Virus record (IMG/VR): IMGVR_UViG_3300028364_000014
Location: 62,001 to 126,000 of that record
Reading direction: 5' to 3' (one strand)
DNA: 64,000 nt
Position 1 is the first letter of the stretch. Each line of letters starts with the position of its first letter. Of the stretch, positions 692 to 30,400 are shown piece by piece. A program made the translations under genes and the position numbers. The notes below the pieces were generated by a model. It saw nothing but the letters and a program-made list of their open reading frames with translations. It was not told the origin of the DNA and did no database searches.

Positions 692-737
692 TCAATTATC
701 TGTTTGAGCAGGTACACAGGCCTTAAGCTCAAAGCGT

Positions 738-757
738 CGCCTCACTTCGGTGGGGCG
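738..757 (+). other. GC-rich hairpin with UUCG tetraloop
   Basis: cgcctcac-ttcg-gtggggcg, intergenic. Confidence 0.6.
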
Positions 758-814
758 GGTGGCAAAATGGACATTCCGTCCACAATTAAACCGTAATACA
801 TAGGAGATTACACC

Positions 815-2614: not shown

Positions 2615-3220
2615 ATGATAAACAATGCCACTTTTACCCCAAACACTCTTGAAATACTTCCTGAATTCTGTGAACTATCCACCTTAACCTCATCGTTATT
2701 TGGTGATAACAATAGCTTAAGCTTTCAAAGTATTAAACTTAGTGCTGCTATTACCGTAAAAAAAGAGTACTTGGATGATTACTCACTTTCACATGACTGT
2801 AAAGCGTCAATATTGCGACAAACCAGAGACAGGATATCTGTACCAATAATACATTCTAATTTTGACTATGCTCTCAGTCGTGCGAGAGAATTTGATGGTA
2901 AGCTGTATTGTGGTAGCACTAACACAGTACGTTGGCAAGTAGAGTGGATAGAGCTACTTAGTAATTCCACTGGTAATGTGTATAAATTAAAGAGAATTAA
3001 AGACGAGTTACTTTGGCGCATGATGCTTATACAAGTGAATGGTGTGTCTATAGAGGACTCAGGGTTATCCTCGGTTGATTTAGAGGCAGTTCGTATGGAG
3101 CTAATGGATATAATTTACGTAATGTGCTTTCGTTTAAAAGGACATAGAGATAAAGGTAAAGTCTGTCAATCAAGGAAGATGCTTGAAGCGCAGCTCGAAG
3201 ACTTAAATACAGAAGTATAA
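2615..3220 (+). CDS. hypothetical protein
   Basis: ORF with strong RBS. Confidence 0.7.
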   Translation: MINNATFTPNTLEILPEFCELSTLTSSLFGDNNSLSFQSIKLSAAITVKKEYLDDYSLSHDCKASILRQTRDRISVPIIHSNFDYALSRAREFDGKLYCGSTNTVRWQVEWIELLSNSTGNVYKLKRIKDELLWRMMLIQVNGVSIEDSGLSSVDLEAVRMELMDIIYVMCFRLKGHRDKGKVCQSRKMLEAQLEDLNTEV

Positions 3221-4650: not shown

Positions 4651-4963
4651 TTAGTGTTCTCGGAAGAGTGCCACCCACTGGCGCTGGCGCGTGTTCTCGG
4701 TATACTGAAAAACAAGCACCACTTCCGGGACAGTCCTGGATTCGGTAGCCTTCCCTGCTTGAAATCTCATATAGTCTGGAAGTCACGAGTACTGCCTAAG
4801 TATTAATCGTTCTACTAAACCAAAGGATTAAATTATGAGCACTAAACAATGGGTGTGGATGATGGACTACTGCAAAAAACAAAGCATTCCACCCGCAGAA
4901 TCCTGGGCTTGGGGAGATGCCAAGAAAGCCTATGAACTTTCCCGCTTGAAATCCTCTATAGTA

Positions 4964-20910: not shown

Positions 20911-21168
20911 TTAATTATAATTTATAATCAATGAGGAGAATTAAAATGGAAAAACAAATTGAAAATCAAAAAAAAATCTTTAGTGTAGTTAAATGTTTAA
21001 ATAAACTAGATAATTGTGATAAAAAATGTCATGTTTGTGCAGTACAAGAAGGATGTGATAATCTATGTAGTTATGCAGTAAAAAACAATATAAATGAAAA
21101 AACCCAATGTATTTATTGGGAAAAATAACAAAAAGAATTTAAAAATACCAGAGACAAAGGAAATTATT

Positions 21169-21606
21169 ATGTTTAATAGTAAAAAATTAGTACTATCTCT
21201 ACCAGCACACGAAATAGAATCTGGTGCAGTACAACAAATATCTCAATGTATTGGGGTAGACGTACTTGAAAAATTAGTAATACTACCAGATGTACATCAA
21301 GGATACGATATTCCAATTGGGTCTGTAGCCTTAATAGATGGGTATGTTTGGCCAGGAGCTGTTGGAGTTGATATCGGATGCGGGATGGGAAGTATAAATA
21401 CCCATCACACATTAGAAGAATTGAGTATGTTTAATAAAAATGATCGTATTGAGGTTTTTAAGGAAATACAAAAAATTATTCCTACAGGATATAGCACAGG
21501 AAATGGATATGATTTTAAATCATTTACTAATTATATAAATGATAAAGACTTCAACACTAATGTTATGAGTAGAATGAATATATCTATTGGTACTCTTGGG
21601 GGTGGT
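21169..21606 (+). CDS. rtcB: RtcB RNA ligase, exon 1
   Basis: LPDVHQGYDIPIG, VGVDIGCGM, ends GTLGGG. Confidence 0.9.
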
Positions 21607-21867
21607 AAAATGGTTGCTTCCAGCCCAAGAGGATAATATAAATATACTGAAATCTTTTCTAATTGACTTGGAATCCCACTATAGTAATTATATTGTGGGA
21701 GACAGGGGCGAACCCGAAAGGGACGTTGAGAGACTAAACGAAAAGATATCATCGAAATGGTAAAGCGATAGTCCGAACATCCGGTATAAGGTTTTCCGAA
21801 GCCGGAGAGATAGGCAGAAATGACCTATCCTTTATTTAGATCTATTAAATAAAGTAACAAATAACTG
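21607..21867 (+). ncRNA. group I self-splicing intron (261 nt, no ORF) in rtcB
   Basis: exon ends in U, intron ends in G; R-like gagagactaaacg and S-like aagcgatagtcc; P10 atggtt pairs with exon 2 aatcat; removal restores GTLGGG|NHF in frame. Confidence 0.9.
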
Positions 21868-22557
21868 AATCATTTTCAAAATATTGGAATAAATAATAAA
21901 GGGGAAGTAGGAGTTACTTTACATACAGGAAGTCGTAATCCTGGTAATATAGTAGGTAAATATTGGATGAATAGAGCAAAAAAGGACGGTATAAATTTTA
22001 ATGGTCTATATATGTATCCAATAAACTCTGAACTTGGTCAAGCTTATTATAATGATATGCTATGGGCAATTGATTACGCAGAGTTCAATAGATTTATTAT
22101 TATGAAAAACACTCTTAAACTATTGGGTCTTGATATAAAAAATTATATTAAAGATATGATAAATGAAACTCATAATCATGCAATTCTACTTCCCAATAAT
22201 AAACTTCTCCATAGAAAAGGAGCTACTCAAGCTGAAAAAGGTATAATGGGGGTAATTCCTGCTAATATGAGAGATGGTGTGTATATTACTAAAGGATTGG
22301 GTAATGCAGAATTTCTATCGTCAGCTAGTCACGGCGCTGGTAGAAAATTTTCAAGAACACAAGCAAAAAAGGTTGTGGATTTTGATGCTGTAGTAAATGA
22401 ATTAGAAGAACTAGATATTATTGTTAATATTACTCCTAAAAATAGTGATGAAAATCCAGGAGCATACAAAGACATTAAACACGTATTAAAATTACAAGAT
22501 GGTATTGTTGTAGATATTATTGATCATTTTATACCTAAAATAGTACATATAGGTTAA
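21868..22557 (+). CDS. rtcB: RtcB RNA ligase, exon 2
   Basis: NHF...LHTGSR, HN, HRKGAT, SASHGAGR, DENPGAYKDI; in frame with ORF 21967. Confidence 0.9.
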   Translation, partial: NHFQNIGINNKGEVGVTLHTGSRNPGNIVGKYWMNRAKKDGINFNGLYMYPINSELGQAYYNDMLWAIDYAEFNRFIIMKNTLKLLGLDIKNYIKDMINETHNHAILLPNNKLLHRKGATQAEKGIMGVIPANMRDGVYITKGLGNAEFLSSASHGAGRKFSRTQAKKVVDFDAVVNELEELDIIVNITPKNSDENPGAYKDIKHVLKLQDGIVVDIIDHFIPKIVHIG

Positions 22558-26868: not shown

Positions 26869-27798
26869 ATGACTAAAGATATATCAAAACTACCACTAAA
26901 AAAAGTAAAAATTGGGGTAAGTCAGCCAAGTTATAAGGTTAAATGGGCTTTATATCATGATCCTGTGACGGTATTTGAAAATCAAGAATTATCTTTCCCT
27001 AAAGCCATTAATGATGGCACAGAAATACATGATTCAGTGTGTTACTCGTCTGTAATTCATCATTACAAATCACTTAGTAAAGAAAAAAATATACCTAATA
27101 GAATTTACACAGAATTAGATTTAAATCCAGATCCAACCAATAAAAACCTTCCTTATCTTTTAAGAAAAGAGATGAGGGAATGGCTTGAGATTTGTATAGC
27201 CAATTTTACACTCCCAAAAAATATAAACCCTATTAAATCCGTACCTTCTACTAAAAAAGGTATAATGGTTCTTGACTTGGAAACTGCAGATAGTACTTTT
27301 ACTTATCTTTATTTAGCTATGTTCAGACATATTAGAGAATCACCGTCATTAGTAAAATCTGTATTATTTCTTCATAAAGAACATAAATTAGACTTTTATA
27401 TTGCTTATGTTTTAGCGTCCTCTTTTAATGTCACCGGTGAAGGGCATCATCCTATAAAGGTTAATAATAGTCCTTATTGTCATAATAAACCTATACCAAA
27501 ACAGATGTCAGATAACATTAACCTTAAAGCTGCTTGTAGTTTATATAGGGCAGTAAATGAAGAAGGTTTGGTAGATGTAGTTCCTTTAAGTGATGCTACT
27601 AACTGGCTTTGTGGTAATAAAATCAGTGAACTATGTAAAAAAGATTTTATAGTACCAATTTCTGATTTACTAGATGAAGAACTTATTAAAGTAGTTCATT
27701 CTTCTAATGATGAGGAAGCTATTAAACACTTTGAACTTTATAGTCAATTACCCAAACCTAAAGGATTTGGGCTTGCAGTTAATCGCAAGCTGATTTAA
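26869..27798 (+). CDS. hypothetical protein whose 3' end is replaced by the IscB element
   Basis: last codons read into the element left end at 27743. Confidence 0.65.
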   Translation: MTKDISKLPLKKVKIGVSQPSYKVKWALYHDPVTVFENQELSFPKAINDGTEIHDSVCYSSVIHHYKSLSKEKNIPNRIYTELDLNPDPTNKNLPYLLRKEMREWLEICIANFTLPKNINPIKSVPSTKKGIMVLDLETADSTFTYLYLAMFRHIRESPSLVKSVLFLHKEHKLDFYIAYVLASSFNVTGEGHHPIKVNNSPYCHNKPIPKQMSDNINLKAACSLYRAVNEEGLVDVVPLSDATNWLCGNKISELCKKDFIVPISDLLDEELIKVVHSSNDEEAIKHFELYSQLPKPKGFGLAVNRKLI

Positions 27799-28005
27799 TT
27801 CAGGATTGAACAGACGTTTAATCAAAGGCTCACCTACGGATGCCACTCCCAGTCCGTAGCAATGGAGGTAAGCGGAGCATTACAAGTCCTCATTGCTGAT
27901 TAGTAGGTAACGAAGATCAGTATTACTTTTGATTAAGTCGGGGGAGACGAACCGAACTATTGAACTATTCTTAGTTTGCCCGATCAATGGGTTTTTATTA
28001 AGAGG
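27743..28005 (+). ncRNA. omegaRNA (HEARO-like) scaffold
   Basis: structured non-coding leader of iscB: gtcaa...ttgaacagac, ctacggatgccactcccagtccgtag hairpin, gtcgggggagac. Confidence 0.8.
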
Positions 28006-28010
28006 TAAAA

Positions 28011-29501
28011 ATGATTTACATTATAGACGCAAGGAACAAGATAGGTCACCCGACCAAGAAACATGATATGATAGGTCGATTGATCCGAAACGAGAAAGCA
28101 AAGATTATTAAGAGATTGAACAAGGATGTTATGATCGTTCAATTATTAACAAAGGTTTTTTCTAAAAGTGAAACAATTGATTGTGAATTTAGGATAGGTA
28201 TTGATCCTGGATATGCAAATATTGGATTTGCTGTGTTTAAAATACATGGCAACATTATCACTAAACTTATTAATGGAGAGGCATATTTACGAACAAAAAA
28301 AATCAAAGAAGGGCTTGATGCTAAGAGAATGTATCGCCGTAATCGAAGATATATAGCTCGAAAGAATATTAAAAAGAAACATGGAATAGGTCAAGCCAAA
28401 TTCAAACATCCTGTTTGGAAAAATCGAAACAAACATAAGTTTCAACCTACTCATCTTCATTTAATTCAATCGCATGAAAATGTGCTGGCAAAATTGTTGA
28501 AACTAATTCCAATCGAACAAGTTAAAATTCATTTGGAATATAATAACTTTGATTTTCATAAAATGATTAATCCTAAGATACAATCTTTTTGGTATCAAAA
28601 AGGGTTACAGTTTGGTTTTGAGAATATAAAAAGTTATGTGAGGAATCGAGACAACTATCAATGTCAAATTTGCAAAAAGGATGTTGGTAATATCAGGAAT
28701 GAAGTTCACCATATCAAATGGAAAAGTAATGGTGGATCAGATCGACCTGAAAATTTAATATTGTTGTGTGAAGGCTGCCACAACAAGGTCCATAAAAAAG
28801 GATTGAGTTGTCCAGATAGATCTATTTCAGTAAATGGATACCGTAATGCTGGAGTTTTAAATTCAGTTATGGAAACAATATGGAGTAAGTTTGAAGATCA
28901 ATGTCCAGTTCAAGACACCTATGGTTATATCACAAGTGGTGTTCGGAACCGAGACAACATTATTAAATCTCACGACAATGACGCAAGCGTTATTGCCTTC
29001 AACGATAGCTTGGGAAGTCAAAACTTTGAGGATTGTTCTTGGAAGGATTATAGCTCTAAATTAAATATGAATCAGTTCCCCAAGCATACCCGATCATTCA
29101 CATTAAGACATACTGACCGTAGATATGTAATTTTAAATTCTAAATTGCCTGAAAAGAAGAGAACTATAGTGGCTTGGAATCGCAAACGAAGGGCGGGCCA
29201 AGATCCTAAGAAGCAAAGCCTTGCCGAGTTGAAGCAATCTCTTATGATTGATGGAAGATTGAATTCAACGGTTATTGTTGTAATCCCAGGGCAGAAGGTA
29301 ATGAGAAGTTTGATCACTGATTACAAAATTCGAAAAGGTGATGTTGTCAATGTGGAATCAACAATACGAGTCTGTAAAGGTGTGCAAAACAAAGGTACGG
29401 TTGTTACTTTTGAAAATGATTTAAACCCAAAGAAATTAGATACATTTGGAACTAAAAAATGTCATAAAATGATAAACAATTGTGGATTGGTGACTTATTA
29501 A
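28011..29501 (+). CDS. iscB: IscB RNA-guided endonuclease (RuvC + HNH)
   Basis: IGIDPG (RuvC-I), RMYRRNRR bridge helix, HLE (RuvC-II), RDNYQCQIC..HHI..GGSDRPENLILLC..CH (HNH), SHDNDA (RuvC-III). Confidence 0.92.
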   Translation: MIYIIDARNKIGHPTKKHDMIGRLIRNEKAKIIKRLNKDVMIVQLLTKVFSKSETIDCEFRIGIDPGYANIGFAVFKIHGNIITKLINGEAYLRTKKIKEGLDAKRMYRRNRRYIARKNIKKKHGIGQAKFKHPVWKNRNKHKFQPTHLHLIQSHENVLAKLLKLIPIEQVKIHLEYNNFDFHKMINPKIQSFWYQKGLQFGFENIKSYVRNRDNYQCQICKKDVGNIRNEVHHIKWKSNGGSDRPENLILLCEGCHNKVHKKGLSCPDRSISVNGYRNAGVLNSVMETIWSKFEDQCPVQDTYGYITSGVRNRDNIIKSHDNDASVIAFNDSLGSQNFEDCSWKDYSSKLNMNQFPKHTRSFTLRHTDRRYVILNSKLPEKKRTIVAWNRKRRAGQDPKKQSLAELKQSLMIDGRLNSTVIVVIPGQKVMRSLITDYKIRKGDVVNVESTIRVCKGVQNKGTVVTFENDLNPKKLDTFGTKKCHKMINNCGLVTY

Positions 29502-29659
29502 TACTCTTATTACGGTAAATAAATCATATCTAACAAAAACTGCTAAAGCAAAGGCTTATATCCCAAAGCTGAAGCATTGGGTTTTACGGCCTAAAGGCCG
29601 AACCGATAAAAACAATGAAAACAAAGATTTGTAATTTTAAATAAAAAAGGTGGGGTTTA

Positions 29660-30205
29660 ATGAACACAATTTTCGCAATAGAAAAAATTAATAAAACAAG
29701 AGAATATCTTGATAGCATCGAAAAACATATTCTAAATGTAAAAAAAGCATTTGAAATTGTTAAAAACAAATGTTCAGATTTGCCTTTTATGGATAATCTT
29801 TTTTTGCATCATCTTAATATAGAAGTTAGATGTCAAGACAGCACAAAACTTTCTGAGGATGTCTTTATTAAAGATCGTCAAACTTTATATCCAACAAGCT
29901 ATGAGAATTTTCCTGATATAATTGACAACTTAAACGAAATTGATTATCATTATACAAAAGTATGGCCTAAAACTTGTGAAAAACATCCTAAGAGTAAAGA
30001 TATGTATAAACTATATTGCACTCATATGGTTATTAATTGGATGGCAAAAGGATTTGAAAGTAATGAGTCTATTCAAGAATATTATTTAAGAAATCAATCA
30101 GAGATAGAAATTCCCACATATGCAAAAAAATTTGTAGACGAATTAATTTTTCATATCGAATCTCAAATCGAAGAAGACCTCGAAACTTATAGACCGTCTA
30201 TGTAG
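29660..30205 (+). CDS. DUF5662/HD-like protein, degenerate
   Basis: KHILNV..., QDSTKLS in place of HD.SK.S, MVINWMA. Confidence 0.4.
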   Translation: MNTIFAIEKINKTREYLDSIEKHILNVKKAFEIVKNKCSDLPFMDNLFLHHLNIEVRCQDSTKLSEDVFIKDRQTLYPTSYENFPDIIDNLNEIDYHYTKVWPKTCEKHPKSKDMYKLYCTHMVINWMAKGFESNESIQEYYLRNQSEIEIPTYAKKFVDELIFHIESQIEEDLETYRPSM

Positions 30206-30400
30206 TTTTTATTATTGATATTAAACGAAGTGTTTTTATAGGAAGGTCAATGGGCGTTAATTATATTATCAAAGATATTGAATCAAAAGAGGTCAACGGC
30301 ATAAAATGTCCACTAGTAACAATAAAGTTTATTTTATGCCATTAGAAGCAATGAGAAATCCAGCTATACTTATTGGTGCTATGCAAAAGTGAGGTAAAAT

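What the first reader, a model, noticed from the sequence alone, without database searches (positions are those of the whole stretch)
26869..29634. IscB insertion with reconstructable empty site, guide and TAM
Seen: joining 27742 to 29591 restores an in-frame end for gene 26869 (...ELY-TKGRTDKNNENKDL*, stop at 29634); currently the gene exits through omegaRNA sequence with a substitute tail of similar length. No target duplication, no tnpA. Established: IscB guides come from the 5' flank and the TAM lies 3' of the target. Inference: guide ends ...aacactttgaactttata, TAM about CTAAA(G), a sequence also present in the left-end hairpin loop; the element would cut element-free sibling phages. N-terminus has IGHPT instead of PLMP.
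Basis: partly seen in the sequence, partly recalled or inferred. Interest (0 to 1): 0.62.

Follow-up and report, generated by a model that had tools for sequence, protein, structure and literature searches.

The report
IscB transposon in a huge phage
A small mobile element carrying an RNA-guided nuclease (IscB, the ancestor of Cas9) sits in the end of a gene of a 238-kb phage; it is a known kind of element, but related phages show its exact borders, its target motif and uncut target sites.

Summary
The IscB insertion is real. It is a 1,863-bp IS605-family element without tnpA, at 27743-29605:
- omegaRNA scaffold (Rfam HEARO) starting at 27743;
- iscB at 28011-29501, 496 aa, nuclease motifs conserved;
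- a hairpin-bearing far end.

The right border is 15 nt short. CTAAAG lies inside the element, in an end hairpin. The motif next to the element is ATAAA, which is TTTAT in transposon orientation. It follows four diverged copies at four different sites, and a fifth copy has ATAAC. One copy has a clean empty site in this same phage genome: a simple insertion with no duplication.

The corrected join gives ELY-NKNNENKDL*, in the same frame and with the same stop at 29634. No sibling carries that tail. Siblings have one of two alleles:
- ELYNKKN* followed by a Band_7 gene, with the guide match plus ATAAAAA intact;
- Band_7 deleted, with a TnpB element 21 bp further right.

iscB is under purifying selection (dN/dS 0.05-0.18) and the omegaRNA pairs covary. 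Homing between co-infecting phages is plausible but untested.

This is a new member of a known kind, in a host type where IscB is rare.

The parts
26869..27742 (+). Native part of the interrupted phage gene (291 codons plus 1 nt, no known domain). Its transcription runs into the element.
   Evidence: 99.6-99.8% identical to sibling contigs up to exactly 27742. No Pfam or PHROG match.
27727..27742 (+). Flank that would supply the omegaRNA guide (16 nt assumed). It occurs once in the window.
   Evidence: It abuts scaffold position 1 and has a single occurrence. Guide-outside-the-element logic comes from Meers et al. 2023.
27743..29605 (+). The whole IS605-family non-autonomous IscB element, 1,863 bp. 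The right end in transposon terms is at 27743 and the left end at 29605.
   Evidence: Homology with four other copies at other sites spans this stretch only. A clean empty site exists for a sister copy.
27743..28000 (+). omegaRNA scaffold (HEARO). It also supplies the substitute 18-aa tail and stop (27796-27798) of gene 26869.
   Evidence: HEARO hit 27743-27957. 18 of 48 predicted pairs show compensatory changes among 9 relatives.
28011..29501 (+). iscB, 496 aa. Motifs: IGHPT 11-15 (PLMP position), RuvC-I GIDPG 63-67, RRNRR 109-113, RuvC-II LEYN 175-178, HNH 218-261, RuvC-III SHDNDAS 320-326.
   Evidence: dN/dS is 0.05-0.18 among five copies.
29502..29605 (+). Transposon left end with subterminal hairpins (29562-29581 and 29588-99).
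   Evidence: DNA folding z -2.7. The stem change ggcc/ggcc to gacc/ggtc in L042 keeps pairing.
29606..29612 (+). Flanking target motif ATAAAAA (core ATAAA, which is TTTAT 5' of the left end). This is the inferred TAM.
   Evidence: Flanks of five copies. Element-free alleles carry ATAAA directly after the guide match.
29606..29634 (+). Remainder of the tail that the gene would have if the element were removed (with 27742: NKNNENKDL, then the stop). Hypothetical, since it is not seen in any sibling.
   Evidence: Reading of the sequence. Tails of cluster members.
29660..30205 (+). ORFan of 181 aa. It is not part of the element but is always found behind it.
   Evidence: All contigs read that carry it show the IscB gene or the element's far end upstream. 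It has no homologue and is absent from the other four element copies.
30301..30391 (+). Remnant of the 3' end of a Band_7/SPFH gene (29 codons plus stop). It marks the right edge of the window-specific segment.
   Evidence: Identical to the end of the 300-aa Band_7 gene of L003-L005.
30302..30326 (-). Intact target of the siblings' TnpB element: TAM TTTAT (reverse complement of 30322-30326) followed by 20 nt. The TnpB element sits at 30321|30322 in siblings.
   Evidence: Comparison of L001 with the window. TnpB domains.

Best explanation
Window 27743-29605 is a non-autonomous IS200/IS605-family element. It consists of an omegaRNA scaffold, iscB and a hairpin-bearing left end. It sits in the 3' end of a gene of a 238-kb phage, in the same orientation as that gene.

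Shown:
- the borders;
- the lack of a target duplication;
- the ATAAA (TTTAT) flank;
- five insertion sites in related phages, with presence/absence differences;
- purifying selection on IscB and covariation in the omegaRNA.

Inferred, step by step:
1. Read-through from gene 26869 makes an omegaRNA whose 5' guide is the last ~16 nt before 27743.
2. IscB with this RNA cuts DNA that has this sequence followed by ATAAA. That means the joint left by excision, or the unoccupied allele of a co-infecting sibling. The Band_7 allele has exactly this target.
3. Repair from the occupied copy reinstates or spreads the element, together with the neighbouring 181-aa ORF.
4. New sites need a Y1 transposase (TnpA) supplied in trans, which I did not find.
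For: Protein and RNA:
- Pfam RRXRR plus HNH.
- Alignment to solved IscBs with RuvC and HNH motifs kept.
- HEARO starting at 27743, with 18 of 48 pairs showing compensatory changes.

Borders:
- Sibling homology stops at 27742.
- Copies 74-93% identical at four other sites share only 27743-29605.
- Clean empty site ...tagggta|ataaatg in L028, which belongs to the same phage genome.

Target and activity:
- Element-free alleles have the guide match followed by ATAAA.
- dN/dS is 0.05-0.18 and all five ORFs are intact.
- End hairpins fold.

Published context:
- Meers et al. 2023 describe the same architecture, the same-orientation bias and TTTAT/TTCAT TAMs.
- ATAAAA fits the published OgeuIscB TAM NWRRNA.
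Against: - No RNA or cleavage data exist.
- The HEARO score is below Rfam's gathering threshold.
- No tnpA was found. The window was checked only with a crude HUH-Y motif scan, and the rest of the genome was not scanned.
- The unoccupied version of the window's own allele (181-aa ORF without IscB) was not found, so a simple insertion at this site is not demonstrated.
- At site 2 the occupied alleles also lack 57 bp.
- Occupied and empty alleles were not seen in the same sample.
Confidence: 0.8

Rival explanations
1. One reading: the element is 27743-29590, the empty site joins 27742 to 29591, and the TAM is CTAAA(G).
For: The join is in frame and ends at 29634. CTAAAG also occurs in the other end's hairpin.
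Against: All sister copies continue 15 nt further, through ...ggccgaaccg, before their flanks diverge. The clean empty site puts this stretch inside the element. Element-free alleles show ATAAA, not CTAAAG, after the guide match. No homologue has the tail.
Confidence: 0.03
2. The mobile unit is the larger block 27743-30300, an IscB element that carries the 181-aa ORF as cargo and ends next to ATAAAATG at 30301.
For: Compared with siblings the window-specific segment is exactly 27743-30300. The 181-aa ORF is always found behind this IscB. The block is again followed by ATAAA.
Against: Four other copies lack the ORF and end at the same left-end hairpins. No hairpin-bearing end is apparent by eye at 30200-30300 (not folded). 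Co-conversion during homing, or ordinary mosaic recombination, explains the linkage equally well.
Confidence: 0.07
3. The element is only kept in place. IscB cuts the joint left when TnpA excises the element from this same genome (restorative homing), and there is no spread between co-infecting phages.
For: This is the demonstrated role of IscB and TnpB in Geobacillus. Occupied and empty alleles were not seen in one sample.
Against: No tnpA was seen, and without it there is no excision to repair (weak). The sibling Band_7 allele carries a perfect target plus ATAAAAA. TnpA-independent spread among plasmid copies has been reported (review PMC13565253).
Confidence: 0.3
4. It is an immobile relic or a domesticated nuclease with another role for the phage, such as cutting host or rival DNA at a fixed site.
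For: No transposase is nearby. The gene is embedded in a phage operon, and its composition is close to the phage's.
Against: There are five different insertion sites, with presence/absence differences between near-identical phages. The ends are conserved far better than synonymous sites. The guide differs at each site, so there is no fixed target.
Confidence: 0.05

Closest known systems
Non-autonomous IS605-family IscB elements of Geobacillus stearothermophilus (ISGst, GstIscB; Meers et al. 2023)
   Same: omegaRNA scaffold at the transposon right end upstream of iscB, with the guide taken from outside the element. No tnpA. Insertion in the orientation of the upstream gene. An A+T-rich pentamer (TTTAT/TTCAT) 5' of the left end serves as the TAM. 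No target duplication.
   Different: Here the carrier is a huge phage, not a bacterial chromosome. Copies differ between sibling phages. The partner TnpA is unknown.
OgeuIscB (PDB 7UTN, 7XHT and relatives)
   Same: Same length class (496 aa) and domain order. RuvC and HNH motifs align (E about 1e-22). ATAAAA fits its published TAM NWRRNA.
   Different: Only distant sequence similarity. The PLMP motif reads IGHPT. The TAM here is inferred from flanks, and two sites (ATAAAT, ATAACT) would not fit NWRRNA at position 6.
Free-standing homing endonucleases of T-even phages (Seg, Mob): intronless homing with co-conversion
   Same: A nuclease gene between conserved phage genes. The rival allele carries the cut site. 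Neighbouring DNA (here the 181-aa ORF) would be carried along.
   Different: Target recognition would be by RNA guide plus TAM, and self/non-self discrimination by the insertion itself. Nothing here has been shown experimentally.
IscB homologues in sequenced phages (Clostridium phage c-st, Clostridioides phage pCD1602_4, Nodularia phage, Staphylococcus Silviavirus with an annotated HEARO RNA)
   Same: An IscB-like ORF in a phage genome.
   Different: 28-35% identity only. They are annotated as HNH endonuclease or hypothetical. Only 8 of 50,697 records match, and no empty sites or TAM were described in what I read.
IS605-family TnpB element of the sibling phages (L001 10899-12286)
   Same: Same TTTAT target motif and the same transposon orientation. 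It is 21 bp (insertion point to insertion point in the deleted allele) from the IscB site and has hairpin ends.
   Different: It has a Cas12-type RuvC nuclease with the guide RNA at the 3' end, and unrelated end sequences.

Membership tests
IscB (OMEGA, Cas9 ancestor) | RuvC domain split by an arginine-rich helix and an inserted HNH domain | tested here: met
   Pfam RRXRR 7.9e-30 over residues 2-198 and HNH 1.2e-10. GIDPG, LEYN, HH...N...H and HDNDA align with OgeuIscB motifs.
IscB (OMEGA, Cas9 ancestor) | N-terminal PLMP domain | tested here: inconclusive
   The region aligns with that of solved IscBs, but the motif reads IGHPT, so only P and T are kept. All five copies compared, IGHPT included, keep intact ORFs under purifying selection. 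The fold was not modelled.
IscB (OMEGA, Cas9 ancestor) | Structured omegaRNA (HEARO) directly upstream, same strand | tested here: met
   RF02033 covers the full model length at 27743-27957, E 2.5e-7, but 45 bits is below the gathering score of 83. 18 of 48 pairs have compensatory changes in 9 relatives.
IscB (OMEGA, Cas9 ancestor) | RNA-guided, TAM-dependent DNA cleavage | not testable with these tools
   Only inferred from conserved catalytic motifs and flank motifs.
IS200/IS605 transposons | Insertion 3' of a short target motif without target duplication | tested here: met
   Filled and empty pair L040 versus L028...tagggta|element|ataaatg against ...tagggta|ataaatg. ATAAA follows four copies.
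IS200/IS605 transposons | Subterminal hairpins at both ends, no inverted terminal repeats | tested here: met
   Hairpins at 27751-27771, 27772-27789, 29562-29581 and 29588-29599. The stem change in L042 is compensated.
IS200/IS605 transposons | Y1 (HUH) transposase TnpA in the element or in trans | tested here: not met
   The element has no room for it. No HUH...Y motif ORF was found in the 64-kb window (a crude test). The rest of the phage and its host were not examined. Absence is usual for iscB elements: about 1.5% have tnpA nearby.

The most novel reading that the evidence does not exclude
In this population of huge phages, IscB and TnpB elements act as RNA-guided gene drives between co-infecting siblings. 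Three things would follow. First, they cut unoccupied alleles and are copied in. Second, they drag neighbouring genes with them, here an ORFan replacing a Band_7 gene. Third, they select for resistant alleles. One candidate is the site-2 allele whose ATAAA has become GTCAA. Another is the deletion allele with ATAAT. The population would then be a natural record of RNA-guided homing and escape in viruses.
Probability: 0.3. Interest if true: 0.72.

Novelty: new member of a known kind. Interest (0 to 1): 0.45.

Why it matters
IscB elements are well understood in bacteria but are rare in sequenced phages: 8 of 50,697 GenBank phage records have a homologue. Spread by cutting the same site in a co-infecting genome has so far been discussed mainly as a theoretical possibility (review PMC13565253).

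This locus offers a ready natural test set:
- exact borders of the element;
- a flank-derived TAM;
- five insertion sites;
- filled, empty and scarred alleles;
- a TnpB element aimed at a site that the IscB-bearing phage still has intact.

It also supplies a compact, apparently active IscB with an A+T-rich TAM and an unusual PLMP-position motif.

Tried and rejected
- GenBank phages: no DNA or protein match to the locus or to gene 26869.
- Unoccupied form of the window's own allele (181-aa ORF without IscB): not present among protein cluster members or the contigs read.
- 19-mer left-flank scan of IMG/VR: returned only the window's contig plus four chance matches.
- Site-2 right-flank scan of IMG/VR: nothing.
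- Homology between the window's sequence after 29612 and the Band_7 allele's intergenic region: not above shuffled controls.
- L036: I first read it as a third left flank at site 2. It is simply the ordinary empty allele, cut by the contig end.
- Homologues of the 181-aa ORF: none.
- Rfam on the siblings' TnpB element: no match.
- Rfam on the gap inside the split RtcB gene: nothing credible.
- tnpA: only a motif scan of the window, which was negative. A full Pfam scan of all ORFs was not done.
- TnpB in the window: no homologue.
Full report
**What is in the window**

The ORF at 28011-29501 (496 aa) matches Pfam RRXRR (7.9e-30, residues 2-198) and HNH (1.2e-10). It aligns with solved IscB structures, OgeuIscB and relatives, at E about 1e-22 to 1e-24. 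The conserved motifs are these:
- RuvC-I: GIDPG, residues 63-67;
- arginine-rich stretch: RRNRR, 109-113;
- RuvC-II: LEYN, 175-178;
- HNH: CQIC...VHHI...PENL...CEGCHNKVH, 218-261;
- RuvC-III: SHDNDAS, 320-326.

Directly upstream, Rfam's HEARO model (the IscB omegaRNA) matches 27743-27957 over its full length (E 2.5e-7). The 45-bit score is below the family's gathering score of 83, and model position 1 falls on 27743. I aligned the 260-270 nt upstream of iscB from this copy and eight relatives. The consensus fold has 48 pairs, and 18 of them show compensatory double changes.

Gene 26869 (309 aa, no known domain) runs into this RNA sequence and ends at 27798.

**The source**

The window is part of IMG/VR contig UViG_3300028364_000014, 237,910 bp (window position = contig position minus 62,000). 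Its genes look like those of a large phage: an RNA polymerase beta-like protein, a helicase, NadR, RNA ligase, RtcB, peptide deformylase and Ro60/TROVE.

**The left border**

Near-identical sibling contigs (99.6-99.8%) match the window up to exactly 27742 and then diverge. Sister copies of the element at other sites begin with the same gtcaattaccc. Together with the HEARO start, that makes three independent lines for 27742|27743. This 16-mer occurs once in the window.

**The right border**

The same element occurs at four other sites in related phages.

| Site | Loci | Identity to window copy | Position | Flank 3' of element |
|---|---|---|---|---|
| 1 | window | - | end of gene 26869 | ATAAAAACA |
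| 2 | L011-L020 | 92.6% nt | before an endonuclease VII gene | ATAAAAAAG |
| 3 | L028/L029 | 83% nt | in this same phage genome, outside the window | ATAAAAAAA |
| 4 | L040 | 82% nt | at the stop codon of a 446-aa gene | ATAAATGAT |
| 5 | L042 | 74% nt | unknown context | ATAACTTCA (border uncertain by 1 nt) |

All copies share sequence only as far as the equivalent of 29605 (...ggcctaaaggccgaaccg).

Site 4 gives a clean filled and empty pair. L040 reads ...caatagggta|element|ataaatgatt. L028, L029 and L039 read ...caatagggta|ataaatgatt, and L028 comes from the window's own phage genome. This is a simple insertion with no target duplication, directly 5' of ATAAA.

The element in the window is therefore 27743-29605 (1,863 bp).

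ATAAA on this strand is TTTAT when read 5' of the transposon's left end. That is the same kind of motif reported for Geobacillus IS605-family elements (TTTAT for TnpB2, TTCAT for IscB). ATAAAA also fits the published OgeuIscB TAM NWRRNA.

**The reconstructed tail**

An in-frame short tail is weak evidence here, because two joins 15 nt apart both give one.

No homologue has either tail. The only protein cluster found holds five sequences with three endings:
- the window's own ending;
- ELYNKKN*;
- ELYNNKMSTSN followed by SDYSPSKPKL*.

**What the siblings have at this locus**

- Allele A (L003-L006). The gene ends ELYNKKN* and is followed by a 300-aa Band_7/SPFH gene. The guide match is directly followed by ATAAAAA, so this allele is a perfect candidate target.
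- Allele C (L001, L002, L007-L010). Band_7 is deleted apart from its last 29 codons. This is a simple deletion with 1 nt of overlap. The guide match is followed by ATAATAA. A 1,388-bp TnpB element sits on the opposite strand, inserted between ...ccactagtaaca and ataaag.
- The window's allele (also L021-L026). It has the IscB element, then 695 bp with an ORFan of 181 aa, then the same Band_7 remnant (30301-30391).

The window-specific segment relative to the siblings is thus 27743-30300, not the element alone. The 181-aa ORF has no homologue. In every contig read it lies behind this IscB, and the other four element copies lack it. I therefore take it as linked DNA and not as cargo of the transposon.

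The unoccupied form of the window's own allele was not found. A simple insertion at site 1 is inferred from site 4, not seen directly.

**Is the element alive?**

- All five iscB copies are intact, and pairwise dN/dS is 0.05-0.18 with dS up to about 3.
- The non-coding ends and the omegaRNA are far better conserved than synonymous sites.
- Both ends fold into subterminal hairpins (z -2.1 and -2.7). In L042 the terminal stem has changed on both sides and still pairs.
- In four of five sites an upstream ORF in the same orientation reaches the insertion point. In sites 1-3 it ends in the same omegaRNA-encoded tail (SQLPKPKG...KLI). At site 4 the stop codon TAA becomes TAG. The context of site 5 is unknown.
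- This fits the reported bias for insertion behind co-oriented genes, which would supply the transcript that carries the guide.

**Mechanism**

Shown: an IS605-family, tnpA-less IscB element with defined borders and target motif, polymorphic among sibling phages.

Inferred:
1. Read-through from gene 26869 yields an omegaRNA whose 5' guide is 27727-27742.
2. IscB with this RNA cuts that sequence when it is followed by ATAAA. The occupied allele is protected, because gtcaat replaces the motif.
3. Repair from an occupied copy restores or spreads the element. With allele A as the victim, the nearest shared sequence on the right starts at 30301. The 181-aa ORF would therefore be copied in and Band_7 lost.

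New sites need a Y1 transposase. None is in the element. A crude HUH...Y motif scan of the window found none, and the rest of the genome and the host were not searched. The closest cellular IscB relative found (42% identity) is in a Bacteroidetes metagenome bin, which is only a hint about the host.

**Comparison with what is known**

The architecture and logic are those of the non-autonomous IscB elements described by Meers et al. 2023. Membership in IscB and in IS200/IS605 is met for every feature I could test, with two exceptions: the altered PLMP-position motif and the missing TnpA, and a missing TnpA is usual for iscB.

The phage setting is uncommon. Only 8 of 50,697 GenBank phage records have a homologue at E <= 1e-10, all below 36% identity and annotated as HNH endonuclease or hypothetical. 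A HEARO RNA has been annotated in Staphylococcus Silviavirus phages without further analysis.

A recent review treats homing into co-infecting phages as a theoretical possibility and cites TnpA-independent spread among plasmids.

**Verdict**

This is a real, probably active IscB transposon. The right border, the TAM and the reconstructed tail are wrong in detail. It is a new member of a known kind. Its interest is moderate and comes from the natural series of filled, empty and scarred alleles, and from the neighbouring TnpB element.

Noticed in passing
window 30301-30326 (minus strand); L001 10899-12286: Sibling phages carry a 1,388-bp TnpB (IS605 OrfB, 401 aa) element at the position equal to window 30321|30322. 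The window has the clean empty site, so TTTAT plus the 20-nt guide match is intact. The IscB-bearing phage is therefore a candidate target of its siblings' TnpB. Both elements use the same TTTAT motif and the same transposon orientation.
   Followed up: partly
window 30300|30301: The right edge of the window-specific segment and the right edge of the Band_7 deletion in allele C are the same base. It lies 21 nt from the TnpB TAM, about where TnpB is said to cut (from memory, not checked). I could not explain why two different alleles share this breakpoint.
   Followed up: no
L053 about 3045-3055, compared with L055 and L050: One element-free allele of site 2 reads GTCAATT where the others read ATAAATT directly after the guide match. 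GTCAATT is the first 7 nt of the element. A deletion between the AATT repeats of an occupied allele would leave exactly this scar, which also destroys the ATAAA motif. L053 is 2% diverged from L055 overall.
   Followed up: partly
L050/L055 about 3047-3103, compared with L011 2951|2952 and 4814|4815: Occupied alleles of site 2 lack a 57-bp stretch that the empty alleles have. The stretch starts with ATAAA and is followed by ATAAAAA. The filled and empty alleles therefore differ by more than the element, as at site 1.
   Followed up: partly
L013 about 4700-4740: This contig has the same element and right flank as L011 but a completely different left flank and gene set. The break is 1 nt inside the element (atcaatt instead of gtcaatt). 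It looks like a rearrangement through recombination between two element copies.
   Followed up: no
L028 2739-4592 (same phage contig, about 49.7-51.6 kb, outside the window): A second, 83%-identical IscB element lies in the same phage genome, also at the end of a small ORF (73 aa) that ends in the same omegaRNA-encoded tail. Site 4, which is occupied in L040, is empty in this genome.
   Followed up: yes
window 29660-30205: An ORF of 181 aa with no homologue among 5.8 billion clustered proteins and no family match. In all contigs read it sits directly behind this IscB element.
   Followed up: partly
window 30301-30391: A non-coding remnant of the last 29 codons and stop of a Band_7/SPFH gene that is intact (300 aa) in sibling contigs L003-L005. 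This indicates that the Band_7 arrangement is ancestral.
   Followed up: yes
window 698-764 (+): A Pistol self-cleaving ribozyme (RF02679), 49 bits against a gathering score of 34.5, E 6.6e-6.
   Followed up: no
window 21094-22557 (+): RtcB is split into two ORFs. They cover profile positions 11-86 and 218-412 and are separated by a 330-nt gap. No intron family matched the gap. The same split is present in siblings L001 and L007.
   Followed up: partly
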